NCBI GenBank assembly: GCA_965637545.1
Contig: OZ281496.1
Location: 124,001 to 188,000, forward strand
Origin: Phallusia mammillata
Taxonomy: Eukaryota
Length of the DNA stretch: 64,000 nucleotides
Direction: 5' to 3'
The translations under genes and the position numbers were made by a program. The stretch's first letter is position 1. Each line of letters starts with the position of its first letter. Shown here piece after piece: positions 24,830 through 64,000 of this stretch. Below the pieces are notes generated by a model that was not told where the DNA came from, ran no database searches, and saw only the letters and a list, made by a program, of their open reading frames with translations.

Positions 24830-30596
<5,767 letters not shown>

Positions 30597-34261: not shown

Positions 34262-34468
34262 TGGAAAACATAAATCCCCGAAAAGATAACCTAAGCGACC
34301 ACTTGGCGGCGGAAGAGAGCATAGATTTGGGAAAAAGGCGGATCGAAGACAGAAAAGGGCGAAATAAATACAAATATTGTAAGGAACGACAACAAACAAT
34401 TATCTTCCGCGATGGAACAAACGGAACAGTTCCTTGTTGACATAAAAAATTCATAAATAAAAATCATT

Positions 34469-37400
34469 TCACGTCAAATTAACTCGAAGTAACGGACTCT
34501 CTGGCGACTCCGTGCGGGTGCGCATGTTGTATGTCGTCACTGTGACGTCATAGAAAGGATACGTCAGTCGACGCACGACCCTGAAAATAAATCACGTGTA
34601 AAAGTTTGCGACAGAAATTCGACATATATTGTTGTACTTACGCTTTATTGTTACGTAACAATCGTATCGACCGGCTGACAATCTGAGTTCCAGCTCTGTA
34701 GAAACGAAGATTAAATCGGACGAATCGCGAAGCAACACCCGATATTCGAACAGATGACCATTCAAGTGTGACCGTGTTTGTAGTCGACGCAGTTTTCCGC
34801 AAACCGGTGGGTGGCGCTAAAGCGTCAGTTGGACCTTGGAACAAAAATGAGTCGTTAACCCTCGCGTTAGGCGGGAAGCCCTTAAAACTTCGCGGCGTTT
34901 CGATTGAATTGAGTGCGAGAATTATAAGAAAGACACGGCTGGCCAGAATGAACTGGAGCGAAATATAGAAGCGCTCGACGACAAAATTAGTCGAACCAAC
35001 GGTGCTCCTCTTGATCCAAACGCTCCAGTAAAATTAACGCAATTAATAAGTAGTTTGGATGGACTCGTAGAAAACAAAAGAAGCGATATTTAGATAGGAC
35101 CTGTTGGGCCGAAAGAGGTGAAAAAACACAAAATATTTTAGAAAAACGTCACGTTAAAAAATAAATAAATCAACCGTCTTAAAAGCGGTGACCAGGTCAA
35201 TACGGACCAAAAATCAATATTATCAGAGCTATCGCGATTTTTTGAAGACCTGTACAAAAGACTCTTACTTAGCCAATTTCAAACAATGAAATTAAGTTTG
35301 CCATTACCACAACGCCTGAAAATAAGTCACCGGGCCTCGACAAATTAAACGGAAATAATAGGCAAACATTGCACTTATATTTCGGACACGACCGTTAAGG
35401 TGATGAAGCAGGTCGCTCTTAATACACCTTATTCAATAAGTGGTTCATAACCTTTATTTTTCCTTGCTGCACCCCTTTCAAATCACCAACCAATTTTCGC
35501 CCCCCCGTTCAAATCACCAACCAATTTTCGCACCCCTTCCGTTTTTGTATTTATATAGAATAGACCTAACCAAACTTAATCATTCAGCATCGCCGCACCC
35601 CCTAGGAACAGTTCTTGCACCCCTTGGGGGTACGTGCACCCATGGTTAAGAATCCCTGCCTTATTGGCTCTAAAACGTAAACGAACTAATATAAAATTAA
35701 ACGGTTTTCACGACCCCACTTGGAATTGCAGTCAGAAACAGCTTGCAAAGTTTCAGTTTGTTCATATAAGCGAAACGGAAATAACAAGCTAACATAATAC
35801 TTATTTTCGAGTGCTCGACCGTTAACGCGATAAATTCCTCTTAATATAACGAATTAGTTCCTCTTAATACACCTTATTGACTCTAAAACGTAAACAAACT
35901 GAGATAAAATTAAACGGCTTTCACGATCCAATTTGGAATTGCAGCCAACCGATCTTGCGAAGTTTCAGTTTGTTCAGAATATCGAAGTGCATTCAACACA
36001 AATAATCTTCAGACCTTCAAAGTAAAGTGGGCTGGCCTTTAGTCCCACGTGTCGCTGCTAGCGTTTTCATTCTCGCCCGTCTTTCTATTAGATTTTCTCA
36101 CATATCAGGTTCACTCACTTTGTGTGACGATTTGAGCGGTCGGTCTGACAAAAACCGGACGCTGTTTTGTTGCAACGACTTGGCGGAAAGAAATCCCCGT
36201 TCCCGACGTCACTGGGCTTGCAGTGATGATGTAATCGGTGTTGGGGGATAGTGACGTAAATGCGACGACTTTGTGTTGAGGTTTGATCAGTTTCAGTTGA
36301 AGAACCTGAAATATTTGGCAATTAAGATTTCTTTCAAGACGCCAAAATCGCTTTTCCTTAGTGACGTCATATTACCCGATTGTTTCCCGGTGTCCTGATC
36401 TCGAATTTCAGAGTTCCGACGCCTTTCGGGAATTTGTTGATCGCCAGTGACACGTGACTACTGCCTAGTGATGTCACAGTGACGTTGATGGTCGATTCTC
36501 GGGCCGGGAGCGTTCTCACGATGATTTTCCCAACAACACCAGGTATGACGTCACCGCGCAGAGTGGCCGGTCTCACTGTGACGTCATAGTTGGTAGAAGG
36601 TTGGAGGTGAGAGATGAAAACTGATCTTCCTCCTCTCAGTCCCTCGAACACAGGAGTCGAACTGTCTCCGTCCAACTTCGTCACAACCAGTTTGAATCTG
36701 CGACAATCGATTTTTTACTCACTATTAAGCAGCATTGTGACGTCACAAGTACCTGTGTACGTTCTGGAATCCGACCCACATGACCTTGAATCCGGTGGAG
36801 GTCACGCCGCTAGGTGGGGCAAACGTGGAGAGAATCCTTTCATCGGTGAGCGCGCTCCCTACGTGTATCACAACCGGGGATTCCTGCAGTAAAATCATAC
36901 GCAGTCGTTGCCTTAACAACGGGAGCAGAAGCGACTTCGCTTTCACCACTGTGACGTCATTCATCTGTGACGTCACGACCACGGATAGCGATTGTGAGAG
37001 TCGCTCGCTTAACGAGTTGATCGTATCGTTTGTTGCGTCCCGAGATTCTTTCAGGAGTTTTATTTCGCGAGCGATTGAAACAATGCTTTCGAACGCGACC
37101 CCTTCTGTGGAACGCTTTCGTCGCCCGATCACCTTCTTCGGTCCTCCTAGAATGTGACGTAACAATCTCACTCTTGTTTATTTTGTTACGTAACAATCAC
37201 TGTATTTTTTGACGTAATAATTACACCATTCTGCATTTCTGTGTTCACTCACCAGAATTCCTTGTAATGGTCGATTGGACGGCGTTGCTTATTTGTTGAA
37301 TGTGTTCTAGAACTCTGGTTCGGAATTCCAGGTCCTCCCCACTTACAAACCCTCCTCTGTTTAGTCGCTCATCGTCGCCCTCTCGTGGTGAGCTGAAGTG

Positions 37401-40400
37401 AAATTTACAGTTGAACGGTTCAGTTTTTCAAGTGTAAAAGGCAACGCTTTGTGTAACATATAAGCGCAGAATCAGTCAAATCTGGACCATTCAACCGTTA
37501 TCCAATGATGTTTTTGCAGGGTTGCCGTCGACATGGACGCCGAAAAAAGGGACAACCGAAAAAATAGATTTTTTGAACAAATCGTATAAACATACGGGCC
37601 TTGACATGCCATGTTTTTTGCCAGGAACAATCTGTTTCAGCAACTCCTTGTTCGTAGAAAATACTTTATGCATCTCACAACAGCTCAAGTCTAGGTTTAC
37701 TTTTACTTGTAGCAGGGATTTGACTTGTAAATGTTGAAAATAAGAGAAAATAAGGATTCAAGTCAAAAACAAGGACAAATCTTAGAAAAAAGGACGGTAT
37801 GGCAACTTTGTGAATATGGTATTATGCACAAATCTAATTTGATTTCGTTACTGTTTATTTATTCCCGCAATAAACAAACACCATGCATCCATTGTAGTTG
37901 TGTTTAACTTTCAAACTTACTCTGGAATTGTTTGTATTGTTTCCAGGAAAGCTGTAACAACTGATTCGAGAATTCCGGTTGTCGGATCGCCCGTTGCCGT
38001 GACAATGCTTCGCGCGAACGGAAGAAACGGGGCTAGAATAAAAAATGTTGATATTTCATAAATTAATTCCATATATGAGTGATTTCTGGGCGTATGAGCA
38101 TCGACCCAGCTTGTTTAGTTTAGCTAATTGTGTTTCTACAATAGCTAGAATGTTTTTATGGATAAGTTTATTGATACATTGTTTTTGTAACACTTTTGCA
38201 ATTAAAGAGAGGAGATATGTTCTGATAATAACCAATGCTACTTGCACAGGAGCTCACACCACAGATTTGGGAATTTCCGATAAGTGGCGCAACGGAGCAT
38301 TGGCGTTCGTAATGGCAGTTGCGCTGAGTTAGCAGCTGTTGCCATCACAAACACAAACGTCTATGCTACGTTACGCTACCTATCGGAAATTCCAAAACCT
38401 GAGCCGTGAGTTTCTGTGTTAGTAGCTCTACCAATAAATAAGGGGTAAAAGGGGAATTCCCTGGTTCTCACCTGTTTTCACCGCGACCCAATCCCCAACA
38501 GTCAACGTAGTCGAATCGCTGCTAACCGCGTTCACTGTGACGTTATAATCAGTTCCAGCCGCGAGATCCTTCAATCGGTACTGTGACGTCACAAACATAT
38601 ATATTAGATGTTAGGTGCATAATGGTCTGTGACGTCAAAAACAAATTTCGATTGTTACCTCATTTGTTGAAATCCCGTTGATTCTGCGCACCATGCTGTT
38701 GCCAATAGCAACGACGAGCATGTATGATCTCGCGAACGGGGTCGGTGTCCACGTGACAAGGAATCCTGATGACGTAATCTGACTGATCATGATGCCACTT
38801 ACGTTATTCGCGTTCGGGTAAGCTGTAAGATAAGTTCAAGGTTAAAAACCTTTAAGTAAGCACGTGCTAACATAGAAAACATACGAATGGTGACCGGAAC
38901 AGCGGATGAGGGGGCGGATTCGAAATATCGTCCAATAGAAACAACAGACAACATGTAACGATTTCTGTAGCCAAGACCCTTTATCACGTATGGTGGTGTT
39001 GCGTTGCTGAAATCAACATAAAAATTACAAAATCTTCAAGTAAATATTTCAACCAAATTCTCACTTTTTGTATTTTTGTTTTATTTTCTTTTATTATTTT
39101 CTAATTTTTTTATATTTTTTTTAATTTTTAGTTCTCACTTGTAAACAAAAATTCTTCCACTTTTGCTGTTTTGCGCCCTCACGCGGTAACCAATGGCGCG
39201 TAACGCCGGCTCCCACGTCACCGTGACGTCATTGGGAGTGACGTGAAGAATTTGGAAATCCCCGGGAACACCGGGAACCAACCGACCTGCGTAATAATGA
39301 CGTCAATTGTCTTGTTAATGACGTAACAATGTGGTTGAGTGTGCGTCATAATACCGATTATTGCATCAAGGCAATGAATTTATTGCGGTATATGTTTGCA
39401 AGATTGATTAGAACTTTTTACATATAAACAAAATATTTATATGCAGGTAAACTTGTGTTAATTCAGCAAACGTGATTAATTATTTTCGTGTTAGTATAAA
39501 TTTTCTCATATTAAAGTTTTAAATTATTCTTTTTCTCGTTAAACAACATAGCAGATAATTTATCTTGGTTGGAATTAGCAGCAAGCATTGTTTCGTCACA
39601 ATAAACAGCTTTGATTGCACAAGAGAAGAAAAAGTGAAATAATTGCAAATTTACAATTATTTGCAAACGAAAGAGCCGCCGTTATTCTATAGCTCTCAAA
39701 CATTTTAATGGCGTGGTTTAAAACCATGACAAGTATACCATGGAATTTAGGCATTTTAATTATCTCGTGAATCCAGTAATTTGCCAACTTAGCAATGCAG
39801 CGAAAGCATTGAGTGATTTGACAGGGAAAGTATAGAGAAGAAGCAAGTAAAGCTATAAGAGAAAACGCAACAAAGCAATACAAAGCTGAACAATTGATGT
39901 CAAATTTGTTTGTTTGTTTTTCAATTTACCTCGTAAAATTTCTCTTTCGGTGCGTTCTGGAATGTTATCATGACGTAATTATCGATATTATGACGTACAC
40001 AAACATATCAATGAATCGGTTTTAGAATCGATTACGTCACCAACTCACGTGTTCGGGTTTTAACTACGTCACTTTCACGTGACCTGTCTCCTTCGCGTCC
40101 CACTGCTACGAATGTGACGTCATAAACGGTGTTTTGTTGCAGCTCGGTGATGAGTGTTGGAGTGAGCGCGCTGACTTGGCTGCGAGATGTTTCAAATATT
40201 TCAGTTGTTTGAGATAAGTATTTCCAGCAAAAATAAATATTTTAGATATAGAGTGAAACTAAAATTTAAATGAAACAGGTTTTAAACCGCTTTAACCCCA
40301 AAAGTGTGAAATATTTCGAAAATAAGGCGACACAAAGAAACAGGTGTAAGGCAGCGTTGACGTCACAAGAAAAATCTAGCCTGCGGTGGGATTCGGACCC

Positions 40401-43400
40401 ACGACAGGAGTCTTTCCGGGACTCGAGCTCTACCAACTAAGTCTCACAGGTTCAATGGTACACCCGCCGAAAGTCGAATCACAAACATTACTGGGAAACT
40501 TTGCTAAACTTTTGGCCTTTAATTAACTCAATTTAAAATAAATATTTTCAACCAATCTTACCCGACGCGTTTGGGAATCTGTCTTCGGGTTTTCACCTGG
40601 ATCTCATAAGACACTGCATGTGGAATCGGCCGTAACGTCACAACGAACGAATCATGCGTCACAGAGCCTATTGTCATCAACGGGGTGACCACGTGACGCG
40701 GCATCACCGGAGAAGGAAAACCTGGAGACAAAAATGAAATTATTCTGATGGAATTTCACAAATAATAATACGCGCGTTCTTTCTTGTTGGCAACGGACAA
40801 TTCTCCGATTGGCCCATAAAGAATCCAATAACACAAGGCTTAGTTTATTTTATGTAACTTTTCATTGTATGTCTGCGCTCTTACGCGCTTTTCACTGTTC
40901 AAGTGTTTATCGCATTTTGTGTTTATATGCGTGTTTATGTTTTTAGTTTGACGGGAATCAATCAGAGCTTTTTAGTGTTATGCTAGTCATATCAGCCACT
41001 GTGTTGTTGTCGCTTGTTTCATCTGCCTTCAACCCGTCCATTTTCGGGTTCGGGCCGGGCCGATTCGGGTTCGGGCCGGGTTTCGGGCTTCAATTTCGGG
41101 CGCGTTTGCAACTCTGGTGCGACTTTCGCCAATAAACAACGACACCGGAGTCACAAATAACAGCTTAACACTTACGAGGAATCACTGTGATTGATCGACT
41201 TGCTCGAGATTTTTCAAATTTCCCAACTGACGTCACTGTTATGACGTAACTGGCACGATGACGTAAATCGGTGACGTTTGTAGTTGTTCCCTTCACGTTT
41301 CTGGAAACACAAAGAAACATCAACAAACGTATTTAAGGTTCACACAACATCGAGAATACCTGATTGTTTGGACAGAGTCCGTTTCGCTGTTCAGCACTGT
41401 GACGTCATAAGACAAAGCTCGCAAAGCGCGAGACCACACGATGATCACGTGGTTTGATCTGATTCGCGTCGCGCGAAGTCCGGTCGGGATTCGGGGAGGA
41501 AATGGTTCTGTTGAGAAAGTTGGGGCAATATGGATTTGTTAAATGTGCAACCTGGTGAGGGGGCAGGGGGATGAAAAATATTTGCTGCGATTTTTACACA
41601 CAAAGTTTATGTTTGTTTGTGATACATGGGCATAACTCGATTTGTCGCCAAACAAGTTTGTATTATATATTTTTCTTTTATCTGATTCCAACCTATTTCA
41701 GTTGAGATCAATTAATTTGTAACTGGGATCAGTCCTTGATCATTGATGCAGACAAGCGATCATGGCACACTCATACAAAAATCACACTACTCCAGTCCCA
41801 TTGAAGGCGCCCCATCCAACCTACTTGTTCGAATTCGCGATGGCGGCGAACTTTCTTCTGTTGTTGCTCCCGAAGCCCCTACAGCTTTCATTGTGACGTT
41901 ATAATGGGTGTCGGCGAACAATAGATCGATTTCCAACGAGGTTTCAGTTTGACCCCTACAAGGTCAACATATGACGTTAGATGACGTAACAAACATATAC
42001 GAACACTGAATCGCGTTCTTACTTGACCGTGTATTCTTTATCCCCTCTGTCGGAACGCAGTATTATGACGTAACTAACGGCGTTTGTGATCTGGGGCCAT
42101 CTAGCGACGAGACTGGTTTGTGTGGTGTTTTGGATGGTTAATAATGGTTCTCTGGTGGTTGGAAGAACTGGTGCTAGGGAATCTATAAAAACAATGATTG
42201 ATTACTGCCTGTGAACTGTGTGCAGTGGGACCACAAGTCAACAGATGCTTAGTAGAAGAGACGGAGACTTAGTATGAGAGACGAAACAGTTGCTTATAGC
42301 AACAGACTAAAATCTATGACAGGTCTGAAGTCATCCACTGTTACTACCTAAGTAGTTAAGCAATACTTAATTAATAGGCATCATCAGTATCCAAACACTA
42401 AAGAATCTTGGACAAGTTAAACTATCAACCACTAACAAGCTTTACAAAAATATGCTGAAAGTAAATTTGAATTGGCCGTCTGTTTGCGCAGTCAAAATAC
42501 AGCAAAACTCATCTTGTTAGTTCTTTACAGTTTAACTTGTTCAAGGTTCTTTACCGCTGTTTGTTTTTAGATACTAATGATGCCTATTATCTAGGTGAAA
42601 TATATATATATCTAAACATAAAAAACGGTGGATGACTTCAAAAAGTCTGTCAGTCTGTTGTCTACGCGACTCTTGTCTCCATCTCTCGAGTCTCTGGTGA
42701 TTCGGGATTTATTAGTTCTCACCAGGGTTGCCAGGTAGTGACGATTAGATTCGGACAATATTTGTCTGAAAATCGGACATTTTAGGACAAAAAAAAACTA
42801 GAGCGTATAATTGCTAACAAGGCATCAATATCGAGGTGCCAACAGCCATTTTTGTGCGCTTACGTTTCCTACACTCATAAGCGCGAGTTTTAGAAAAATG
42901 CAAAGGGGTTGACGTAAAACATGACAAACTTCCCATGTTTGACAAAAAAACGACATGTTTAAAATAATATTTAGTCGGCAATTGCAAACACGTTGCTGTA
43001 GCGTTTATCATTGGTTTTAGCAACGTTTAAAAAATGTTTTGTCAAGTTGTTGCTTCAAATCACCTTAGATAACCATCTGTTACAATACATTTGAATTGTA
43101 CACAACAATGGCCAGACATTCACTGGTAGGCAATTATGTGTTTAACGTCATAAACAAGGCACTAACCAAAACAAGTTGCAGTTTTAAGCCACGTTTTGTC
43201 GTTAAAGAGATTTGCAACCTTCAAAAAATAGGATTTTCGGACATATAACAAAATTCGGTCATATTAGGACAAAAAACTAAATGTCCTAATGATTTTTAGG
43301 CGTCGGACACAGCATGTGAAATTAGGCCAATTTATCGTTTTTTGTCCGAATTTTAGGCCACCTGGCAACCCTGGTTCTCAGTCTGTAGATAATCGCCTGT

Positions 43401-52400: not shown

Positions 52401-55400
52401 ATGACGTAATCAGTTGCACCTGGTGACGAAACAAAACAATTATTAAAACCATTTAAACAAAAACGAAACGAAATAACTCACCTCGTACATTTGTCCAAAA
52501 CAAATTAAGGGATTTTGTGTTTATTTGTGAGATTTCTATCTTTCGAGGTGGCAGAGGAACTGAACAAAATATTAAATGTTTTAAGTTTCACCGAGAAAAC
52601 TTACTGAACCTACTTCACCTGTTTGAACTTGAACGTGAACTTCAGGGTCAGAATTAACCACACCCAAATCTCCAATAGAAATCACACGGAACTTGTACCA
52701 GCTTCCTGGCCTCAAAGCAGTCGCAGTTGAGGTCGTTGAAGCTGTTTTCGGGGTTTTGAAAGTTTCGTTTGAAGATAAAGTTACTTGGAGTTCGTAAAGG
52801 TTGGCACCTGATGTAAAAGTTTAAAGAAACAAACATGACAGCTACTTAAATTTTAAGTGATTGCAATTTTAACGGGTTGAATAAGTTTAATACTTTGCAA
52901 GATATAAAAGCGTAATACTATTCTTGGTAGCATTTCCTCAAGGGTAAAATTTATTACAAACTGGTTGCCACTTACCTACGACCGGTTGCCAGGCAACGGA
53001 GATACTTGTTGTTGTGACCTTGCCCAATGAAATGACCTTCACAGCCTCTGGTACTGAAAATAAATCAGGTTTACTCCACAATATCGCAACATTACAAGCA
53101 GAAAGACTCACAAGTTGCAATCGACAACTCTTCGCTTTTCCCGCTCTCAACTTTCCCGCCAAAACCAACAGAACTGACGGAAATACCGTGTTCCCTTCCC
53201 GCTTCCAGGAAATTCAACCTGTGTGACGTAACGTTCACTGTTACGTAGGCAGTGACGTCAGTGAGCGCGTTGACGTAAGCGAGTTTGTAGCTGGAAGCCC
53301 CAAAAACTTCGTTCCACGACACCGACATGGAATCGGTGGTTACCATGACAACGGAGACGTCAGAGGGAATTTCGGGAACTGCAAAATATTTTCATGGTTA
53401 GTCAGACTTTATTTGTGACATCACAATGATCTTTGTCACCTGTTTGTTGATGAACAATCGGGCTTCCTCCTAGACTTTCGCGGTTTTTCGAATCCACAGC
53501 AAATACTTTGAAACCATAAACTGAACCGGGATTCAAATTATCGATGGAAACATCGTTTGTGGGTGAATGTTGTTTACTGGTTTCGTTCAAACTCGATATT
53601 TCTACCAAGTATTCAAGCGCTCCTACAAACAACAAGTGTTAGTACGTGATGAATAACGTTGCTGTCATGTTATTCTGCCTTATAGGGTTGTGTAGATATT
53701 GTTCAAGAATTGCCACAGCATACGAATAATATCTTATATTAAAAAAAATGTTTTACAATATATTTTCAAAATCACGAAAAAGTTTTCACCTTTGACCTCT
53801 GCCCATTGGAGTGTGACGGTTGTAGAAGTGACGTCAGTGACAGTTGGCGCGAGCGGATTTTGAGGAACTAAAAATAGAAAAAAACAGAAATATTCGATTC
53901 GTGAGAATTTCCGGACGTTGATTTGGTCAAATGCTCTTTGCAGACCTTGCAAGTTAAGATAACTGATAACATCTACAATTTAGTTGGCAGCAATCTAAAC
54001 TGGCTTTTATGTTGTTATTTCCTCCAATTTTTAAAATGTTGCGTTTTGACAAATCTTATTTTACCTGTGGTTTCTTCAACTTGCAAACTCGCTTCGCTCA
54101 TCCGACTTTCCTCGCCAATACTTTTCACAACAAACCAATATCTCGTTCCACTAGATAATGACGTCACTTCAAGACGTGTCAACGACGTTTCCATGGTGTT
54201 TGTGACGTCATCATCAACGTTTCCATATTCAAGTCGATATTGGGCAGCCCCTGAAATAATGCCGCAAAAGTTGTAAGTCGGTTCTCGCGGAAATATCCCA
54301 GTTCAAACTGCTTTTTCTGCCTCTTAACGAACATTTAAAGCAGGGGTTCTTAAACTTTTGCGGTCGTACCCCACTTTACACTATTTATTTAATCTCACGT
54401 CCTCCCTAAATAAATATTAGCATCGATAAAATCAATCAGAAGGATACGTCTTTGAATCAGATGCACTGAAAGTAATGGCAATCTCCAATGCAAAATTGCG
54501 AACAAATAGAGAATTTACGGGAAAGAAAAGAAGCCAGGGTTAAGACATCATAACTTACCAATGACGTCACTCCAACGTAATACAACTGATGACGTGGTGA
54601 CATTTGTTATGATGACGTTGTCAGGAGCAAGAGGAACTGAAAACAACAATAAACTTGTTTACAATGCTATTAACCAGTGGTAACTTAGTGTTGAGTAATT
54701 AACTAACCAGTGGATTATTAACTAACCAGTGTTGGATTATTAACTAACCAGTGGATTATTAACTAACCAGTGGATTATTAACTAACCAGTGTTAGATTAT
54801 AAACTAACCAGTGGATTATTAACTAACCAGTGGATTATTAACTAACCAGTGGATAATTAACTAACCAGTGGATAATTAACTAACCAGTGGATTATTAACC
54901 AACCAGTGTTGCATTATTAACTAACCAGTGCTGCATTATTAACTAAGGATTGAATCATTAACTAACCAGTTTGTATTTGTATTTTTTCACTTCCTCTCTC
55001 ATTTCTTCTGTCTTTGATTCCAATAGAGAAAACAACAAAATCGTACCACGTGCCTGGGTTTAAACCAATCACAACCGCCTGAGCTGGAATTGTTTCCAAA
55101 ACTTGTCGCGTATCTTCCGTCCCATTGGTCCGATAAATCACGTGATATTTTTCCGCGCCTGGAATATTCAAGTTTTAAATCAAACTTAACCAAAACATTT
55201 CATTTCTAAGCAAACCTTGGACTGGTTTCCAACGCAACAGAACTGACGTGGTTGTGACGTCATCAAAGTTTACTCCTGAGGTAGCCGCCGGTCCTGTGAC
55301 GTTATCAACCAAATTAGTAATGACGTAAATATGACGTAACTAATTTCAACTTACGGGTTGTTTCACGTGTTTGAACACTTGCGGCGCTGTGACGCCCAGA

Positions 55401-58400
55401 AACCCCAACTGACGTCACGGTTATGACGTAAGTAGTTCCGGGAATTAGGTTTTTGAGCACTGATGATGTCACATTGGAGGTTTGGTTGTAAATTGTGACG
55501 TTGTCGTTTGTCGCAAAATACCGGATGACGTAATCAGTTGCACCTGGTGACGAAACAAAACAATTATTAAAACCATTTAAACAAAAACGAAACGAAATAA
55601 CTCACCTCGTACATTTGTCCAAAACAAATTAAGGGATTTTGTGTTTATTTGTGAGATTTCTATCTTTCGAGGTGGCAGAGGAACTGAACAAAATATTAAA
55701 TGTTTTAAGTTTCACCGAGAAAACTTACTGAACCTACTTCACCTGTTTGAACTTGAACGTGAACTTCAGGGTCAGAATTAACCACACCCAAATCTCCAAC
55801 AGAAATCACACGGAACTTGTACCAGCTTCCTGGCCTCAAAGCAGTCGCAGTTGAGGTCGTTGAAGCTGTTTTCGGGGTTTTGAAAGTTTCGTTTGAAGAT
55901 AAAGTTACTTGGAGTTCGTAAAGGTTGGCACCTGATGTAAAAGTTTAAAGAAACAAACATGACAGCTACTTAAATTTTAAGTGATTGCAATTTTAACGGG
56001 TTGAATAAGTTTAATACTTTGCAAGATATAAAAGCGTAATACTATTCTTGGTAGCATTTCCTCAAGGGTAAAATTTATTACAAACTGGTTGCCACTTACC
56101 TACGACCGGTTGCCAGGCAACGGAGATACTTGTTGTTGTGACCTTGCCCAATGAAATGACCTTCACAGCCTCTGGTACTGAAAATAAATCAGGTTTACTC
56201 CACAATATCGCAACATTACAAGCAGAAAGACTCACAAGTTGCAATCGACAACTCTTCGCTTTTCCCGCTCTCAACTTTCCCGCCAAAACCAACAGAACTG
56301 ACGGAAATACCGTGTTCCCTTCCCGCTTCCAGGAAATTCAACCTGTGTGACGTAACGTTCACTGTTACGTAGGCAGTGACGTCAGTGAGCGCGTTGACGT
56401 AAGCGAGTTTGTAGCTGGAAGCCCCAAAAACTTCGTTCCACGACACCGACATGGAATCGGTGGTTACCATGACAACGGAGACGTCAGAGGGAATTTCGGG
56501 AACTGCAAAATATTTTCATGGTTGGTCAGACTTTATTTGTGACATCACAATGATCTTTGTCACCTGTTTGTTGATGAACAATCGGGCTTCCTCCTAGACT
56601 TTCGCGGTTTTTCGAATCCACAGCAAATACTTTGAAACCATAAACTGAACCGGGATTCAAATTATCGATGGAAACATCGTTTGTGGGTGAATGTTGTTTA
56701 CTGGTTTCGTTCAAACTCGATATTTCTACCAAGTATTCAAGCGCTCCTACAAACAACAAGTGTTAGTACGTGATGAATAACGTTGCTGTCATGTTATTCT
56801 GCCTTATAGGGTTGTGTAGATATTGTTCAAGAATTGCCACAGCATACGAATAATATCTTATATTAAAAAAAAATGTTTTACAATATATTTTCAAAATCAC
56901 GAAAAAGTTTTCACCTTTGACCTCTGCCCATTGGAGTGTGACGGTTGTAGAAGTGACGTCAGTGACAGTTGGCGCGAGCGGATTTTGAGGAACTAAAAAT
57001 AGAAAAAAACAGAAATATTCGATTCGTGAGAATTTCCGGACGTTGATTTGGTCAAATGCTCTTTGCAGACCTTGCAAGTTAAGATAACTGATAACATCTA
57101 CAATTTAGTTGGCAGCAATCTAAACTGGCTTTTATGTTGTTATTTCCTCCAATTTTTAAAATGTTGCGTTTTGACAAATCTTATTTTACCTGTGGTTTCT
57201 TCAACTTGCAAACTCGCTTCGCTCATCCGACTTTCCTCGCCAATACTTTTCACAACAAACCAATATCTCGTTCCACTAGATAATGACGTCACTTCAAGAC
57301 GCGTCAACGACGTTTCCATGGTGTTTGTGACGTCATCGTCAACGTTTCCATATTCAAGTCGATATTGGGCAGCCCCTGAAATAATGCCGCAAAAGTTGTA
57401 AGTCGGTTCTCGCGGAAATATCCCAGTTCAAACTGCTTTTTCTGCCTCTTAACGAACATTTAAAGCAGGGGTTCTTAAACTTTTGCGGTCGTACCCCACT
57501 TTACACTATTTATTTAATCTCACGTCCTCCCTAAATAAATATTAGCATCGATAAAATCAATCAGAAGGATACGTCTTTGAATCAGATGCACTGAAAGTAA
57601 TGGCAATCTCCAATGCAAAATTGCGAACAAATAGAGAATTTACGGGAAAGAAAAGAAGCCAGGGTTAAGACATCATAACTTACCAATGACGTCACTCCAA
57701 CGTAATACAACTGATGACGTGGTGACATTTGTTATGATGACGTTGTCAGGAGCAAGAGGAACTGAAAACAACAATAAACTTGTTTACAATGCTATTAACC
57801 AGTGGTAACTTAGTGTTGAGTAATTTACTAACCAGTGGATTATTAACTAACCAGTGTTGGATTATTAACTAACCAGTGGATTATTAACTAACCAGTGGAT
57901 TATTAACTAACCAGTGTTAGATTATAAACTAACCAGTGGATTATTAACTAACCAGTGGATTATTAACTAACCAGTGGATAATTAACTAACCAGTGGATAA
58001 TTAACTAACCAGTGGATTATTAACCAACCAGTGTTGCATTATTAACTAACCAGTGCTGCATTATTAACTAAGGATTGAATCATTAACTAACCAGTTTGTA
58101 TTTGTATTTTTTCACTTCCTCTCTCATTTCTTCTGTCTTTGATTCCAATAGAGAAAACAACAAAATCGTACCACGTGCCTGGGTTTAAACCAATCACAAC
58201 CGCCTGAGCTGGAATTGTTTCCAAAACTTGTCGCGTATCTTCCGTCCCATTGGTCCGATAAATCACGTGATATTTTTCCGCGCCTGGAATATTCAAGTTT
58301 TAAATCAAACTTAACCAAAACATTTCATTTCTAAGCAAACCTTGGACTGGTTTCCAACGCAACAGAACTGACGTGGTTGTGACGTCATCAAAGTTTACTC

Positions 58401-61400
58401 CTGAGGTAGCCGCCGGTCCTGTGACGTTATCAACCAAATTAGTAATGACGTAAATATGACGTAACTAATTTCAACTTACGGGTTGTTTCACGTGTTTGAA
58501 CACTTGCGGCGCTGTGACGCCCAGAAACCCCAACTGACGTCACGGTTATGACGTAAGTAGTTCCGGGAATTAGGTTTTTGAGCACTGATGATGTCACATT
58601 GGAGGTTTGGTTGTAAATTGTGACGTTGTCGTTTGTCGCAAAATACCGGATGACGTAATCAGTTGCACCTGGTGACGAAACAAAACAATTATTAAAACCA
58701 TTTAAACAAAAACGAAACGAAATAACTCACCTCGTACATTTGTCCAAAACAAATTAAGGGATTTTGTGTTTATTTGTGAGATTTCTATCTTTCGAGGTGG
58801 CAGAGGAACTGAACAAAATATTAAATGTTTTAAGTTTCACCGAGAAAACTTACTGAACCTACTTCACCTGTTTGAACTTGAACGTGAACTTCAGGGTCAG
58901 AATTAACCACACCCAAATCTCCAACAGAAATCACACGGAACTTGTACCAGCTTCCTGGCCTCAAAGCAGTCGCAGTTGAGGTCGTTGAAGCTGTTTTCGG
59001 GGTTTTGAAAGTTTCGTTTGAAGATAAAGTTACTTGGAGTTCGTAAAGGTTGGCACCTGATGTAAAAGTTTAAAGAAACAAACATGACAGCTACTTAAAT
59101 TTTAAGTGATTGCAATTTTAACGGGTTGAATAAGTTTAATACTTTGCAAGATATAAAAGCGTAATACTATTCTTGGTAGCATTTCCTCAAGGGTAAAATT
59201 TATTACAAACTGGTTGCCACTTACCTACGACCGGTTGCCAGGCAACGGAGATACTTGTTGTTGTGACCTTGCCCAATGAAATGACCTTCACAGCCTCTGG
59301 TACTGAAAATAAATCAGGTTTACTCCACAATATCGCAACATTACAAGCAGAAAGACTCACAAGTTGCAATCGACAACTCTTCGCTTTTCCCGCTCTCAAC
59401 TTTCCCGCCAAAACCAACAGAACTGACGGAAATACCGTGTTCCCTTCCCGCTTCCAGGAAATTCAACCTGTGTGACGTAACGTTCACTGTTACGTAGGCA
59501 GTGACGTCAGTGAGCGCGTTGACGTAAGCGAGTTTGTAGCTGGAAGCCCCAAAAACTTCGTTCCACGACACCGACATGGAATCGGTGGTTACCATGACAA
59601 CGGAGACGTCAGAGGGAATTTCGGGAACTGCAAAATATTTTCATGGTTGGTCAGACTTTATTTGTGACATCACAATGATCTTTGTCACCTGTTTGTTGAT
59701 GAACAATCGGGCTTCCTCCTAGACTTTCGCGGTTTTTCGAATCCACAGCAAATACTTTGAAACCATAAACTGAACCGGGATTCAAATTATCGATGGAAAC
59801 ATCGTTTGTGGGTGAATGTTGTTTACTGGTTTCGTTCAAACTGGATATTTCTACCAAGTATTCAAGCGCTCCTACAAACAACAAGTGTTATAACGTGATG
59901 AATAACTTTGTTGTCATGTTATTCTGATTTTGTTTCAAAGGTTGTTTATTTTTATTTGTTCAAGAATTATCAAAGTAAGAGAATAGTTTCTAATACTAAA
60001 AAACTGTTTCTACAATTTATTTTCAAAATATGGAGAGAAAAGTAATTTCACCTTTGACCTCTGCCCATTGGAGTGTGACGGTTGTAGAAGTGACGTCAGT
60101 GACAGTTGGCGCGAGCGGATTTTGAGGAACTAAAAAAATAAAAAAATAAAATATTCGATTCACCATAATTTCGAGACTTACTTGTTGATTCGGAGAAAAC
60201 TTCGCTTCGTTCGCTGCGTTGACCGCCTTCACCAACCGTTGTGATAGTGACGTCATATAGCGTTCCAGAACTGAGGTTTGCGATCACAACTCGCGTGTCT
60301 GACGTCACTATGGTATCCGGCAGGAATATGTCATCATCTTGTGACGTTACAATCACTTCGTACGTAGAAGCTCCTGCGATTGGTGACGTAATTAAGTTTT
60401 AACTTGGGGTGGTGTGATTTCTATGTTACCTTTTACGTTTTCCCAATCCAAAGCAAAACTTGAATCGCTGGTTTCCGACACAGAAATATTTCGCACAGAT
60501 TCAACCACTGAAAAAGAAAGCAGAGAATTTAATATTTATTCGATAAATTGCGTTAACGAACTTGAATTCCCGATTTTTTAATAAGCAACCTGTTTGTGTC
60601 AGGGAATATGTTTAATACATAAGACTTCTCACTGCCAGCAACCAAAAACGGGTAGAGCTACTAACACAGGATCTCATAATAGAAAAGGGTCAGGCGCGCC
60701 GGAGCTCCAGCGTTTTTTACAAAAACTGCATTTGAAATATTTCCGTTGTGCCACCTACCGGAATTTAGCAAACCTGTTTGGTGTGAGTTCTTGTGTTAGC
60801 AGCTCTACCCTAAAAATGTGGGTGGAGCTACTAACACCATACCTCTCGCGACACCCAAAAGTCCCTAATTTTCGACAAGTGGCGCAAAGAGCAGTTTTTT
60901 ACATTTGAAACGTTATATCTCCTAAAATGCTGACGGTTAGGGCTATTGGGGTCGGGGTAAGGTATTAGCATTTAAAAATTCACTAAAACTAACCCCAAAA
61001 TTTAGTTTCTAATGTAAAAATTGTATAAACTTATTTCCCAACCCAACCCCTCTTCAGCCGCTAAATAAATAATCCAGCTCTTTACGCTCCCTTGTGAAAG
61101 TGAAACTCCCGTGAAGCATGGTGTTAATAGCTCTACCAAAAATCTCCTAAACTCTGAACTCACCAGTTTGAAACGTCACAACTCCGCTCGTCCCCGGACT
61201 CGTCCGGTTCCGCACCCCCACTGACGTCATAGTGACGTCATACCACGTTCCAGCTGTGAGTCCCGTGATCTCGCTTGAAGGGCGTTCGGCGGTCAAAGTC
61301 ATAATGTCACCTTCTTCACTTTCAACAAATACTTCGTAATAAACAGCTCCTGTGACGACAACGTCGGTTAGTGACGTCAGATAAACTTCGAGTTGCAAAA

Positions 61401-63822
61401 TTTTGGCAAACCTTTCTGTTTATTCCATTTGATGCTTGCAGCATTTAGTTCAACAGAAGTCACAGTAGCATTGCTTGGGACATCAGGCCCTAAGAACAAA
61501 TAATTGGATTTCAAAACTAGTTTAAGCGAATAGTTCCAACTTACCTTTTGCACTTGCCAGAAAACAAACGCAAAAATGACCCAAAAGTTTTATTCACACA
61601 AGTTTAGTAAAACCAGTAAAAGAAAATACAGAAGTTGGTAAAAATTCAATTCGAATTTTGTACTTACTTCATGAGAGCAACAGTAAAAATACGACTTCCG
61701 TATATTTAATCTTCATTCCGACCTTTTCTTCTTTGCAGGTGGAAGTAGTGTTACGTCACAATGCAGACTTTTGTTACGTCACCACGTTACGTCACCGGAG
61801 CAAACTTTTATTCTCAGCAAATCATGCAAACAATTGTTGTGTTGTGACGTCATAAGTGTCGTGAAACGATGTGAATTTTTTGGATGGAAAGGAAATGTGA
61901 AAACACAACTTATGAATAAGGACATTGGGCTAATTATTGAAGAAATCTACAGATTTCATGCAGGGGTTTCAGTCACGCCTCATGCAAGCATCAGTGATAA
62001 TTACATTTTGTCCCAATTGATTGAAGGTTATTTTGAGATTTTGGGGTCGCTATAGTGTTGTTGTTATACAGTTTTATGCGACAATAGTTGGTTCGTCCAG
62101 TTTCAAGCAACATTGTCAGGGGTGATATTTTCAGTGATATTAACTTACACAAAATATGAACTTATATTTCGTGTGAACTTTAGAAAATAATGAAACAATT
62201 GTGAAAATTAAACAGCAAATTTGTGTTAAAAGTTTGGTGCAAAACAGCAAAGTTTTGTCAGTTAGTGAACACCCCCCCTTCTTGCTCCCCCGTGCACACA
62301 GCAGCGCCACCAAGTGTTTCTAGCTTTGCAACAACTCACTGGTCGTCTCGCGAACCACGTGACTTTCCGCGCTTGACTGGTTTTCCTCTCCGACCGCCGT
62401 CACATAGAAATCGTATGCAGTGCCAGCACTCAACGATTCGATGGAAATAAATGTTTCACTCGTTGTGAGAATTACTTCGTTTTCGTCAGGATCGACGCTG
62501 CGGACCCGGATATTGTAGGACTGTGCCCCTGTGGATGGATATACCGGTTTGCAGACAGGAGTTTGGGTGGAAATGATGAATTTTTTTGCAAACTTAATTC
62601 AGGCCAACTAATGATGTAGCCAACTGTGGTAATAGTTCAGATATAAATCACATTTTGATGAACTATTGATTAAAACTTTTTTCAATTGCTATTGTAAGAA
62701 GTAATAAATTATGTTTAGTATAACAAACCTATGACAGATTTCCACCAGAGGCCGATCGACGAAACGTTGACTTCGGTAACAACAACATCAGTTGGCGTTG
62801 ATGGGACTAAACAAAATAATAGTTAAACAAACGCCAACACAAGCACATAGCCTCACAGCCACAAAAAAACACATAGCCAGAAAAACGCACAGACACGCGG
62901 CCACACAACCGCACAAACACAGAAACGCACAGACACACAGACACACGGCCACACAACCGCACAAACACAGAAACGCACAGAGACACAGCCACACAAACAC
63001 ACGATCGCACAAACATACAGCCGCACAAACACAGAATCGCACAAACGCACAGCTACACAAAGAAGTTAAACGCACAGCAACACAGCTACACGAACACACA
63101 CACAGCCCCGTCAAACGTACAAACGAATAAACATACACAACACACAAACCTTCCAACCTGTTTGTTTTCTCGCTGTATCGCTTCCATTCCGGTTTATGCG
63201 GTCTTTCACGCCAACTGAATAAATCACAAACTCGTGCCATGTGCCAGCTGGCAGGTTCTCAACTGTGACACCTGTGACTGCCCCGCTGCCACTTTCCACA
63301 CTCATGTTGACAATCCCCTCATTGTTTTCGATTGTCACCACATAGTTCTCGGCTCCTTTTTGCGCGTTCCATTCTAATTCGACTGTGTTGGTTGTTACGT
63401 CACTGACAGTTACAGAACTTGGTCTGGAAGGAACTAGAACACAAAAACAATAATCAAATGTTTCGTTTACAAAGTAGATTATGACGTCACTTACGAGTTG
63501 TTTCGCTTATTGCTTGTGACGTCACACCAGTAAGATTTACGAGGCCAACAGCGGTCACGGTAAACCTGTAGTTACTTCCAGACATAAGACTTGTCAAAGT
63601 CATAAACGTTTTTTCTGTTGTAGAACTTGTGACGTCATCATTTTCATTATAAACATTAATGACGTAATAAACGGCACCTGTAAGCATAGTTTGCATTAAA
63701 CATCGGGATATCAAACAAACACAATCATAGGTGAGATTACAAACCGTTGACGTCATCCCATGACAAAGTTAATGACGTAGTAGTGACATCACTACTCTGA
63801 AAGTTTCGAGGAGACGCTGGAG
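34469..63822 (-). CDS. Giant FN3-repeat protein, probably secreted extracellular matrix; 5'-partial, 83 exons, about 4,070 aa and 43 FN3 domains in window, no TM segment
   Basis: Exons 5' to 3': 63822-63745, 63677-63495, 63433-63158, 62806-62729, 62528-62340, 61489-61412, 61349-61164, 60507-60430, 60373-60182. Then an 11-exon unit three times; copy 3 is 60129-60052, 59871-59689, 59627-59361, 59302-59225, 59056-58868, 58808-58731, 58668-58480, 58418-58341, 58283-58092, 57761-57684, 57375-57190, and copies 2 and 1 span 56992-54065 and 53867-50941. Then 50830-50753, 50689-50504, 50332-50255, 50180-49995, 49529-49452, 49374-49183, 49118-49041, 48979-48797, 48740-48663, 48528-48337, 48281-48204, 47421-47239, 47178-46909, 46679-46602, 46535-46350, 46220-46143, 45990-45802, 45744-45667, 45611-45432, 45171-45094, 44656-44468, 44398-44321, 43638-43432, 42182-42023, 41955-41825, 41507-41360, 41300-41176, 40721-40562, 40179-40049, 39956-39930, 39286-39139, 39006-38885, 38822-38659, 38580-38472, 38032-37921, 37392-37253, 37146-36753, 36697-36376, 36305-36119, 34834-34642, 34580-34469 (TGA). 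All are GT-AG and frame-consistent (12212 nt). FN3 signature P..P..V..VT.TS..V.W..V.GA..Y.V...L.PGT.Y.F.V.SVG. Confidence 0.9.
34919..35275 (+). mobile_element. Degenerate L1/Tx1 non-LTR retrotransposon ORF2 fragment (linker between endonuclease and RT)
   Basis: Translations in shifting frames with stops give ELERNIEALDDKIS, WAERGEKTQNILEKRHVKK and INRLKSGDQVNTDQKSILSELSRFFEDLYK. These match the L1/Tx1 W...GEK.TKYF..LEK / DQ..IL....FY..LY motifs. Confidence 0.7.
35435..35980 (+). repeat. hAT remnant (3' end GGTTAAGAATCCCTG at 35658) followed by two diverged direct repeats of about 110 bp (35659-35768 and 35872-35980)
   Basis: CCTTATTG.CTCTAAAACGTAAAC...AAAATTAAACGG.TTTCACGA...TTGGAATTGCAG...AAGTTTCAGTTTGTTCA is present twice. 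Confidence 0.65.
37517..37810 (+). mobile_element. Diverged MITE, same family as 15909-16258
   Basis: Ends CAGGGTTGCCGT / ATGGCAACTTTG, with shared internal blocks (GTAGAAAATACTT, TAGCAGGGATTTGACTT, AAGGACGGTATGGCA). Confidence 0.72.
38231..38432. mobile_element. MITE of the GGTAGAGCTACTAACAC-TIR family
   Basis: Right end GTGAGTTTCTGTGTTAGTAGCTCTACC, degenerate left end GCTACTTGCACAGGAGCTCACACC. Confidence 0.65.
40380..40450 (-). ncRNA. tRNA-like cloverleaf (tRNA-derived SINE head or tRNA pseudogene)
   Basis: Minus strand CCTGTGAGACTTAGTTGGTAGAGCTCGAGTCCCGGAAAGACTCCTGTCGTGGGTCCGAATCCCACCGCAGG. It has an A-box, a B-box variant, anticodon stem GAGTC/GACTC with loop CCGGAAA, T stem GTGGG/CCCAC, acceptor CCTGTG/CGCAGG and a downstream TTTTT. 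Confidence 0.55.
41031..41116 (-). mobile_element. MITE end with (CCCGAA/GGCCCG)n subterminal repeats
   Basis: Minus strand CAGAGTTGCAAACGCGCCCGAAA followed by CCCGGCCCGAACCCGAA repeats; truncated. Confidence 0.55.
42257..42686. mobile_element. Fold-back (long inverted repeat) element
   Basis: AGAGACGGAGAC / GTCTCCATCTCT ends; GAAGTCATCCACTGTT pairs with AACGGTGGATGACTTC; TAATAGGCATCATCAGTATC...GGACAAGTTAAACT pairs with AGTTTAACTTGTTC...GATACTAATGATGCCTATTA. Confidence 0.7.
42723..43373. mobile_element. Non-autonomous hAT element (CAGGGTTGCCAGG family)
   Basis: Perfect 14-bp TIR CAGGGTTGCCAGGT / ACCTGGCAACCCTG, TSD GTTCTCAC / GTTCTCAG (7/8), and GGACA/TGTCC subterminal repeats. Confidence 0.88.
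44022..44256. mobile_element. hAT MITE
   Basis: TIRs CAGTGGTCGGCAACC / GGTTGCCGACCCCTG, TSD ACTTCAGT / ACTTAAGT (7/8), and ACCGGTCCGC subterminal motifs. Confidence 0.88.
44854..45065. mobile_element. hAT MITE with degenerate left end
   Basis: Right end GAGCCGCATGCGGCCCC...GTTTGAGAACCACTG, left end CAGTGGAAACT, TSD ATTTAAAA / TTTTAAAA. Confidence 0.72.
47479..48183. mobile_element. GGTAGAGCTACTAACAC-TIR MITE interrupted by an L1/Tx1 insertion
   Basis: Left end GGTAAAGGTATTAACACACGAACTCACAC and right end GTGTGAGTTCCTGTGTTAGTAGCTCTACC. Confidence 0.78.
47691..48077 (-). mobile_element. 5'-truncated L1/Tx1 retrotransposon copy (ORF2 C-terminus plus A-rich tail)
   Basis: ORF 47774-48079 (YWENVCAWI...LLFG...LVNCMLLCARYVIYQCK...KKWCRLL) matches L1/Tx1 ORF2 C-termini. 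An (AAAAT)n/polyA tail lies at about 47691-47735. Perfect 17-bp TSD AACTGTCCGCATTTTTT at 47674-47690 and 48078-48094. Confidence 0.85.
51576..51843. repeat. Intronic minisatellite, 19-21-bp unit ACTAACCAGTGGATTATTA, about 12 units (copy 1)
   Basis: Direct tandem repeats ending at the exon boundary 51843. Confidence 0.95.
54700..54967. repeat. Same minisatellite (copy 2)
   Basis: About 12 units; the order of variant units differs from copy 1. Confidence 0.95.
57825..58092. repeat. Same minisatellite (copy 3)
   Basis: About 12 units; nearly identical to copy 2. Confidence 0.95.
60650..60810. mobile_element. MITE of the GGTAGAGCTACTAACAC-TIR family
   Basis: GGGTAGAGCTACTAACACAGGATCTCA / TGAGTTCTTGTGTTAGCAGCTCTACCC. 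Confidence 0.82.
60821..61137. mobile_element. Second MITE with the same TIR but a different interior, 10 bp from the first
   Basis: GGTGGAGCTACTAACACCAT / ATGGTGTTAATAGCTCTACC. Confidence 0.8.
62830..63150. repeat. AC-rich low-complexity minisatellite
   Basis: CACACAACCGCACAAACACAGAAACGCACAGACAC units, in the intron between exons 63158 and 62806. Confidence 0.9.
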
Positions 63823-64000
63823 CTGTAATATAAATTAGAAAGTAAAATTATGTCGACAAGCCGTGGCTGCCAGGCATGATATCAAGTTTATAGAGCTCTT
63901 CTGGCAAATGTAATTTTATTCCAACGTTTCGACATCCTATGCAGGTCGCATTCATCAGGGTAAATAACACTGAATGTACGTAGTACAGTGCACGATAAAC

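What the first reader, a model, noticed from the sequence alone, without database searches (positions are those of the whole stretch)
34469..63822. Giant FN3 polymer protein: at least 43 domains, no membrane anchor
Hand-spliced exons give about 4,070 aa of almost pure FN3 repeats ending in a stop, with no TM segment and none of the fibrinogen-like, FN1, collagen or phosphatase domains that end tenascins, fibronectin, FACIT collagens or RPTPs. The gene continues past the window end, so it is larger still. A rod of more than 40 FN3 domains suggests a long structural or adhesive filament, for example tunic or larval attachment matrix if this is an ascidian (inference). I do not recognise a named gene with this architecture.
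Basis: partly seen in the sequence, partly recalled or inferred. Interest (0 to 1): 0.8.

Follow-up and report, generated by a model that had tools for sequence, protein, structure and literature searches.

The report
Giant secreted sea-squirt FN3 matrix protein
This stretch holds the last two thirds of one very large sea-squirt (Phallusia mammillata) gene for a secreted, anchor-less matrix protein: one VWA domain, then 50 to 70 FN3 domains in a row. The sequence is already public under a misleading "phosphatase-like" name, and no paper found here describes it.

Summary
On the minus strand, 82 phase-compatible exons (63822 to the stop at 34471-34469) give 4,060 aa with exactly 43 FN3 domains, no cysteine and no membrane-like segment. 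Transcript-like contigs from three studies confirm all 11 splice junctions laid, in the 3' 6 kb.

The gene is not unknown as a sequence. It matches Phallusia mammillata CAB3265300.1 (5,021 aa), auto-named "receptor-type tyrosine-protein phosphatase eta-like". That name is wrong: there is no membrane segment and no phosphatase domain.

Full architecture:
- signal peptide, then an RxKR site
- a VWA domain (nearest solved relative: collagen VI alpha-3)
- 48 FN3 domains
- three final FN3 domains

Same-plan orthologues exist in Clavelina (5,778 aa) and Ciona (3,607 aa plus a VWA-bearing gene call just upstream). Both are labelled "uncharacterized". No paper was found.

New point: 22 of the 43 window domains (61489-49995), including three nearly identical 3.1-kb six-domain cassettes, are absent from the deposited protein, which joins domain 3 directly to domain 26. 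Whether they are spliced in is untested. The ends of the protein match 1:1 between species, while the middle expanded separately in each lineage. Any tunic or adhesion role is speculation.

The parts
34148..63822 (-). In-window part of the gene: 82 exons, 43 FN3 domains, 4,060 codons plus the 3'UTR. The 5' third of the gene lies beyond position 64000.
   Evidence: Exon model. The 3' part is confirmed by spliced contigs. It matches P0001 at 100% over domains 1-3 and 26-43.
62340..63822 (-). FN3 domains 1-3 of the window model, equal to residues 2912-3178 of the deposited protein.
   Evidence: 100% identity over 267 aa.
49995..61489 (-). FN3 domains 4-25: 22 domains in 41 phase-1 exons with intact reading frames and canonical AG/GT sites, but absent from the deposited protein, which joins domain 3 to domain 26.
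   Evidence: They score 52-75 bits against an HMM trained only on deposited domains. Domains 4-9 and 24 are at most 42% identical to any deposited domain.
50927..60161 (-). Tandem array of 2.96 copies of a 3,124-bp unit. Each unit carries six FN3 domains (11 exons). Identity is 98-99% overall and near 99.9% away from the array edge.
   Evidence: Self-BLAST and exon/intron difference counts.
43432..49529 (-). FN3 domains 26-35. Nine are split into a 78-bp exon plus a 180-207-bp exon; domain 30 is a single exon. All introns are phase 1.
   Evidence: 100% identical to P0001.
38472..42182 (-). FN3 domains 36-40, more divergent, with a different position of the intron inside the domain.
   Evidence: Junctions from 40180 downstream are seen in contigs.
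36815..38032 (-). Non-FN3 module of about 200 aa in three exons (38032-37921, 37392-37253, 5' part of 37146-36753). It is predicted as a bundle of five helices.
   Evidence: No Pfam family. AlphaFold2 gives a core pLDDT of 75-93. No fold match in the PDB. The module is conserved in Clavelina, Ciona and two fragments.
37112..37123 (-). Codons for RRKR (model residues 3667-3670), a furin-type site lying in or at the edge of a low-confidence loop between helices 2 and 3 of the module.
   Evidence: RRKR is kept in Clavelina, is RKRR in fragment P0002, and is absent in Ciona.
34472..36814 (-). The last three FN3 domains (41-43), divergent from the rest. Domain 41 carries an RGD in its F-G loop.
   Evidence: The three domains match 1:1 with Clavelina and Ciona. 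The RGD itself is not conserved.
34469..34471 (-). Stop codon (TGA).
34148..34468 (-). 3'UTR. Two contigs end at about 34148. Other contigs run on into the convergent plus-strand neighbour gene.
   Evidence: No AATAAA signal was found.

Best explanation
This is the 3' two thirds of a single Phallusia mammillata gene for a giant secreted extracellular-matrix glycoprotein that belongs to an ascidian-restricted family.

Shown: the plan is signal peptide, RxKR site, one VWA domain with a degenerate metal site, a long uninterrupted row of FN3 domains (48 in the deposited form, up to 70 if all window exons are used), a roughly 200-aa helical module with an exposed RRKR site, and three divergent C-terminal FN3 domains. 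There is no membrane anchor, enzyme domain or collagen sequence. The only cysteines are in the signal peptide and the VWA domain.

Shown: nearly every FN3 domain is coded by one or two phase-1 exons, so any domain can be duplicated, lost or skipped without breaking the frame. The two ends of the protein are conserved domain for domain between ascidians. The middle grew separately in each lineage by tandem cassette duplication, most recently by a three-fold copy of a six-domain unit in this genome.

Inferred: it works as a long flexible rod or tether in the matrix, about 180-250 nm if each FN3 spans 3.5 nm. The VWA head would dock to another matrix component or to itself. The FN3 row would set length and give elasticity. 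A furin-type convertase would cut the rod inside the helical module. Tissue and binding partners are unknown.
For: - FN3 identity and count.
- No cysteine, no hydrophobic segment, 54 N-glycosylation sequons.
- Spliced contigs from three studies confirm 11 junctions and a transcript end near 34148.
- The linker exon finds the 5,021-aa self protein at 100%, plus Clavelina (42%) and Ciona (29%) giants and nothing convincing outside ascidians among 1.84 billion representatives.
- VWA in Phallusia and Clavelina, and in the gene call just upstream of the Ciona gene.
- Nearest solved VWA is collagen VI alpha-3 (E = 3.6e-33).
- Signal peptide, conserved RxKR and four conserved VWA cysteines.
- No non-FN3 gap of 25 aa or more apart from the N-terminus and the linker.
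- No Gly-X-Y runs.
- Helical module with RRKR in or at the edge of a low-confidence loop.
- Conserved ends and lineage-specific middle.
Against: - Nothing here shows where or when the protein is made, that it is secreted, or that it is cleaved. The function is inferred from domain content only.
- The signal peptide and VWA domain lie outside the window. They are tied to it only through the deposited protein, whose origin (cDNA or gene model) I could not check.
- 22 of the 43 window domains are missing from that protein.
- The linker model rests on five sequences (mean pLDDT 63).
- The runs used are only guessed to be RNA. The spliced contigs and the match between their word share (0.28-0.33) and the exon fraction (0.32) argue that they are.
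Confidence: 0.78

Rival explanations
1. Only about half of the window domains are really part of the protein. On this view domains 4-25 (61489-49995) are skipped exons, a copy-number variant not present in all animals, or partly an assembly duplication. The true product would be the 5,021-aa, 51-domain form.
For: The deposited protein joins domain 3 to domain 26 exactly at the exon borders, with a codon that spans the junction. The three cassettes are near 99.9% identical away from the edge, which fits a very young duplication or an assembly problem. No protein matching cassette domain 7 was found in the word search, though that blank is weak.
Against: All 41 exons are open, phase-compatible and have AG/GT borders. 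Domains 4-9 and 24 are old, unique sequences, at most 42% identical to any other domain, yet still score as good FN3 domains. That is hard to explain without coding constraint. There is no N gap in the region. The older gene set may simply have lacked this repeat-rich stretch. Two contigs stop exactly 30 nt (k-1) upstream of domain 26, as expected if the exon joined there has more than one continuation (my arithmetic).
Confidence: 0.3
2. It is the outer part of a receptor tyrosine phosphatase of the R3 type (PTPRJ/eta), as the database name says.
For: The automatic name. Weak Pfam hits to the Dep-1 (PTPRJ) FN3 families. The FN3 domains carry the W-4-G-3-Y type B-C loop that resembles R3 receptors (compare PMC5336234).
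Against: The stop codon is followed by a 3'UTR, and contigs end at about 34148. There is no hydrophobic segment or PTP domain in the Phallusia, Clavelina or Ciona proteins. The next gene lies on the opposite strand. An N-terminal VWA domain is not a feature of R3 receptors.
Confidence: 0.02
3. It is a collagen-less descendant of a FACIT/collagen VI-type gene, meaning the non-collagenous VWA-FN3 arm of a collagen XII/XIV/VI-like ancestor that lost its triple helix and expanded its FN3 row.
For: A VWA domain followed by FN3 domains is the signature of the collagen XII/XIV/XX/VII arms and of WARP (established knowledge; PMC3308698). The best solved match of the VWA domain is collagen VI alpha-3.
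Against: No TSPN domain and no Gly-X-Y run in any of the three species. No hit to short VWA-FN3 proteins in the word search. VWA plus FN3 could have been joined independently by exon shuffling. No phylogeny was made.
Confidence: 0.12

Closest known systems
Collagen XII / XIV / XX non-collagenous arms and WARP (VWA1)
   Same: Secreted matrix proteins in which VWA domains are followed by rows of FN3 domains. They form rod-like arms that bridge other matrix components.
   Different: This protein has one VWA domain and 50-70 FN3 domains. It has no TSPN domain and no collagen triple helix. It carries a helical furin-site module near the C-terminus, and its only cysteines beyond the signal peptide are four in the VWA domain. 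No sequence-level orthology was found.
Tenascins, especially tenascin-X with about 30 FN3 domains
   Same: A long FN3 row coded by phase-1 exons, with alternatively spliced or lineage-variable FN3 numbers, and an elastic matrix role.
   Different: No N-terminal assembly domain, EGF repeats or fibrinogen globe. Phallusia has a separate true tenascin, CAB3267154 (PMC11401434).
R3 receptor tyrosine phosphatases (PTPRJ/eta, PTPRB, PTPRQ)
   Same: FN3 domains of a similar sequence type, which is the source of the automatic database name.
   Different: No membrane segment and no phosphatase domain. There is a VWA head, and the FN3 count is several times larger.
Ascidian orthologues: Clavelina lepadiformis LOC143466065 (XP_076820779.1) and Ciona intestinalis LOC100178140 (XP_078481437.1)
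   Same: Same plan. The helical module is 42% and 29% identical. The C-terminal FN3 domains match 1:1 (the last 13 or so in Clavelina, the last 9 in Ciona), and the first 15 also match 1:1 in Clavelina.
   Different: The number and sequence of the middle FN3 domains differ. Ciona lacks the RRKR site, and its annotation splits off the VWA-bearing 5' part as a separate gene. The RGD is found in Phallusia only.

Membership tests
R3 receptor tyrosine phosphatase (PTPRJ/eta-like, the database name) | A single transmembrane helix after the FN3 row | tested here: not met
   The best 19-residue hydropathy outside the signal peptide is 1.26 in the window model. No TM-like segment follows the FN3 row in P0001 or P0003; the top Ciona segments (1.75-1.8) are internal FN3 strand sequences. 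Transcript contigs show the stop and a 3'UTR.
R3 receptor tyrosine phosphatase (PTPRJ/eta-like, the database name) | Cytoplasmic PTP catalytic domain (PF00102) | tested here: not met
   No PF00102 hit in any C-terminal exon or in the C-terminal 580-600 residues of the orthologues.
Tenascin | EGF-like repeats and a C-terminal fibrinogen-related domain | tested here: not met
   There is no cysteine in the 4,060 window residues, and the only non-FN3 stretches are the VWA head and the helical module.
Fibronectin | FN1 and FN2 modules | tested here: not met
   No such Pfam hits and no cysteines outside the N-terminal 218 residues.
FACIT collagens (XII, XIV, XX) | VWA domains combined with FN3 rows | tested here: met
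   PF00092 at residues 42-206 of P0001 and 49-214 of P0003, followed by FN3 domains.
FACIT collagens (XII, XIV, XX) | TSPN domain and Gly-X-Y triple-helical segments | tested here: not met
   No run of four or more Gly-X-Y triplets in P0001, P0003, P0004 or the full model. No TSPN or LamG hit.
WARP / VWA1 | Orthology of the VWA plus first FN3 domains to the 445-aa VWA1 protein | tested here: inconclusive
   A word-based search with residues 1-400 found nothing at E <= 1e-8 among proteins of 220-700 aa. That tool can miss distant relatives.
Ascidian giant VWA-FN3 family (defined here) | The conserved helical module between the FN3 row and the last three FN3 domains | tested here: met
   phmmer E-values are 2e-71 (self), 5.5e-17 (Clavelina) and 5.8e-08 (Ciona), plus two fragments. 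Alignment A1.

The most novel reading that the evidence does not exclude
Ascidians have their own class of cysteine-free, furin-processed matrix filament with fixed ends (a VWA head plus 15 FN3 domains, and a 13-FN3 tail with a helical hinge) and a length-adjustable middle. In this animal the middle would be actively expanding by six-domain cassettes. Through 41 frame-neutral exons it could be spliced into isoforms of 5,000 to 7,000 residues. That would make it one of the longest uninterrupted FN3 rows known and a candidate tether of the ascidian-specific tunic or larval matrix.
Probability: 0.25. Interest if true: 0.65.

Novelty: new variant of a known kind. Interest (0 to 1): 0.45.

Why it matters
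It corrects a misleading public name: this is not a phosphatase receptor. It defines a conserved ascidian-only family of very large matrix proteins built from familiar parts in an unfamiliar plan. It also gives a clean example of a protein whose ends are fixed while its middle grows by recent cassette duplication. It offers a concrete uncharacterized candidate for work on tunicate-specific matrices such as the tunic, larval attachment or the notochord sheath. It is still a descriptive result. No function, tissue or partner is known, and FN3/VWA matrix proteins as a class are well understood.

Tried and rejected
- Word-based protein searches gave little. Residues 3100-5021 of P0001 returned only distant FN3 proteins at 22-26% identity. 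Cassette domain 7 returned nothing (after a frame slip). Residues 1-400 returned nothing. Because of the length window and word filter, these blanks say little.
- The helical module has no Pfam family. Its weak hit to paramyxovirus fusion protein F0 (E = 0.01, below cut-off) I take as chance similarity of a basic site followed by a heptad-like helix.
- The module found no PDB fold match and no ESM Atlas look-alike.
- Exon-versus-intron conservation among the cassettes looked like selection (4 versus 49 differences). Nearly all intron differences sit at the array edge, 59750-60161, so I do not use it as evidence of constraint.
- The RGD as a conserved integrin site is rejected. It is absent in Clavelina and Ciona.
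- The Rfam tRNA hit in an intron was not confirmed by ARAGORN.
- Paper searches by accession and by domain terms found no description of the family.

Full report
**What is there**

The window is eukaryotic DNA with about 40% G+C. From 63822 down to 34469 the minus strand carries a very regular series of short open exons. Single exons hit Pfam fn3, for example 46886-47188 at E = 2.5e-9.

I listed every AG..GT interval that is open in phase 1 and scored each with an HMM built from the window's own domains. I then chained them and fixed a few borders by hand. From 63822 to 43432 there are 35 FN3 domains. Thirty are split into a 78-bp exon and a 180-207-bp exon; five are single exons. All introns are phase 1 (one search shows one example base by base).

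The complete in-window model has 82 exons and 4,060 codons, and it ends at a TGA at 34471-34469. An HMM scan finds exactly 43 FN3 domains, spaced one residue apart over most of the length. There is one 200-residue gap between domains 40 and 41. The model has no cysteine, 54 N-glycosylation sequons and no hydrophobic stretch.

**Transcript support**

Six small runs hold 0.28-0.33 of the sampled words of 34300-44200. By my count the exons make up 0.32 of that stretch, which fits RNA. I laid four runs from three studies on 34200-40199. Their contigs show 11 joints with GT..AG ends on the minus strand.

These joints define the exons 40180-40049, 39286-39139, 39006-38885, 38822-38659, 38580-38472, 38032-37921, 37392-37253, 37146-36753, 36697-36376, 36305-36119, 34834-34642 and 34580 onward. 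A loose end links 40180 to 40563. Two contigs of 5.9 and 6.1 kb end about 52 nt below 34200. Translation through these exons stays open up to the stop.

The runs are only guessed to be RNA, and contigs cannot show strand or expression level.

**Identity**

I used the exon 37144-36755, which is non-FN3 and therefore specific, to search 1.84 billion representative proteins. Six hits came back:
- P0001: 5,021 aa, 100% identical.
- P0003: 5,778 aa, 42% identical.
- P0004: 3,607 aa, 29% identical.
- Two short fragments.
- One fungal protein that I take as noise.

The sources name these proteins as follows:
- P0001 is Phallusia mammillata CAB3265300.1 / A0A6F9DQI9, "receptor-type tyrosine-protein phosphatase eta-like".
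- P0003 is Clavelina lepadiformis XP_076820779.1, "uncharacterized protein LOC143466065 isoform X5".
- P0004 is Ciona intestinalis XP_078481437.1, "uncharacterized protein LOC100178140".

Earlier notes of this scan had already guessed a sea squirt.

**Whole architecture**

P0001 starts with a hydrophobic signal sequence, then RRKR, then a VWA domain at residues 42-206. Clavelina has the same layout with RSKR. The four VWA cysteines are conserved, and both species have E-x-S-x-x in place of the D-x-S-x-S metal-binding motif.

In Ciona the VWA and first FN3 domains are annotated as a separate gene that ends 350 bp upstream of P0004 on the same strand. This is most likely one gene split by the annotation.

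Outside the N-terminal 223-228 residues and the roughly 200-residue module, neither P0001 nor P0003 has any non-FN3 stretch of 25 residues or more. None of the proteins has a run of four Gly-X-Y triplets.

The best solved relative of the VWA domain is collagen VI alpha-3 (E = 3.6e-33). The FN3 domains are generic; their best matches are titin, fibronectin, LAR-type phosphatases and tenascin.

**The helical module**

The module aligns across all five sequences, with a conserved core AFESL.SIARE.K.LK. AlphaFold2 on this shallow alignment predicts five helices with a core pLDDT of 75-93. RRKR lies in or at the edge of a low-confidence loop between helices 2 and 3.

Foldseek finds no PDB match. 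RRKR is kept in Clavelina, is RKRR in a fragment from another species, and is missing in Ciona.

**What the deposited protein leaves out**

Window domains 1-3 equal P0001 residues 2912-3178, and domains 26-43 equal residues 3180-5021, both at 100%. Residue 3179 is the codon formed by joining the last base of exon 62528-62340 to the first two bases of exon 49529-49452. The deposited form therefore skips 61489-49995, which is 22 domains.

Of these, domains 4-9 and 24 are unique, at most 42% identical to any deposited domain. Domains 10, 11 and 25 resemble deposited domains 22-23, which lie 5' of the window, at 81-98% identity.

Inside this region a 3,124-bp six-domain unit is present 2.96 times, at 50927-60161. 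Away from the array edge the copies differ at only a handful of positions. Most differences lie in introns at 59750-60161.

All skipped exons are open and correctly bounded. They score 52-75 bits on an HMM trained without them.

Two contigs stop exactly 30 nt upstream of domain 26. That is what a k = 31 graph gives when the exon joined there has two continuations (my arithmetic). It is compatible with alternative splicing or with the repeat, and it does not decide between them.

With all exons used, the protein would have 73 FN3 domains, 6,971 aa and 763 kDa. The deposited form is 551 kDa.

**Evolution**

I scored best matches domain by domain between species.
- Phallusia domains 1-15 pair 1:1 and in order with Clavelina domains 1-15.
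- The last 13 or so Phallusia domains pair in order with the last 13 of Clavelina, and the last 9 pair with Ciona.
- The middle shows no such order.
- Clavelina has its own younger repeats in the middle, at 50-73% identity. Ciona has none.

So the ends are fixed and the middle is remodelled separately in each lineage.

**Function**

Function is inferred only. The domain content points to a secreted, glycosylated, flexible rod with a docking head and a convertase-sensitive hinge.

The RGD in the F-G loop of domain 41 is at the fibronectin-like position but is not conserved. I therefore do not build on it.

I found no paper on this family. The Phallusia tenascin described in PMC11401434 is a different protein. 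The R3 phosphatase survey PMC5336234 describes Ciona genes that do have phosphatase domains.

**Verdict**

This is a real, correctly counted giant FN3 protein without an anchor. Its sequence is already public under a wrong name, and the family is uncharacterized. It is of moderate interest, mainly for its architecture and its expanding middle.

Noticed in passing
window 36951, 37692, 38580: In all four runs some contigs match the window up to these points and then continue for 255 or more letters that are not found anywhere in the window. They could come from paralogous genes or from alternative splicing to exons elsewhere.
   Followed up: partly
window 51563-51853, 54687-54977, 57812-58102: An intronic minisatellite with offsets of about 19-20 and 41 bp, at 84-90% identity, present once in each cassette copy.
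   Followed up: no
window 40378-40451 (-): Rfam tRNA hit at the gathering score (29.2 versus 29 bits), inside an intron of the gene. ARAGORN finds no tRNA there.
   Followed up: yes
window 33431-34120 (+): A convergent neighbour gene whose open frames look like a beta-1,3-galactosyltransferase (recognised by eye, not tested). Contigs of two runs continue from the FN3 gene's 3'UTR into it, so the two 3' ends probably overlap.
   Followed up: partly
window 35400-35800: High contig depth inside the 1.28-kb intron, with short loose ends. It is probably a transcribed repeat or mobile-element fragment, not part of the gene.
   Followed up: no
window 62780-63258: An intronic low-complexity repeat that gives long open frames rich in His, Thr and Gln on one strand and Cys and Val on the other. 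It is not coding for this gene.
   Followed up: no
window 4404-5408, 22363-22731, 25587-28721 (+): Other plus-strand genes recognised by eye only: Ig-like exons, an ETS-domain-like exon, and ankyrin repeats followed by a long Ser/Lys-rich exon.
   Followed up: no
L001:1-9651 and 10001-45589: In the Ciona intestinalis assembly the VWA-bearing 5' part and the 3,607-aa FN3 part are annotated as two adjacent same-strand genes only 350 bp apart. This is most likely one gene split by the annotation.
   Followed up: partly
window 36755-37144 (-): The segment from the RRKR site into the following helix gives a sub-threshold Pfam hit to paramyxovirus fusion glycoprotein F0 (E = 0.01, 14.7 bits against a cut-off of 29.8), aligned at the F0 cleavage-site region. 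I take it as chance.
   Followed up: partly
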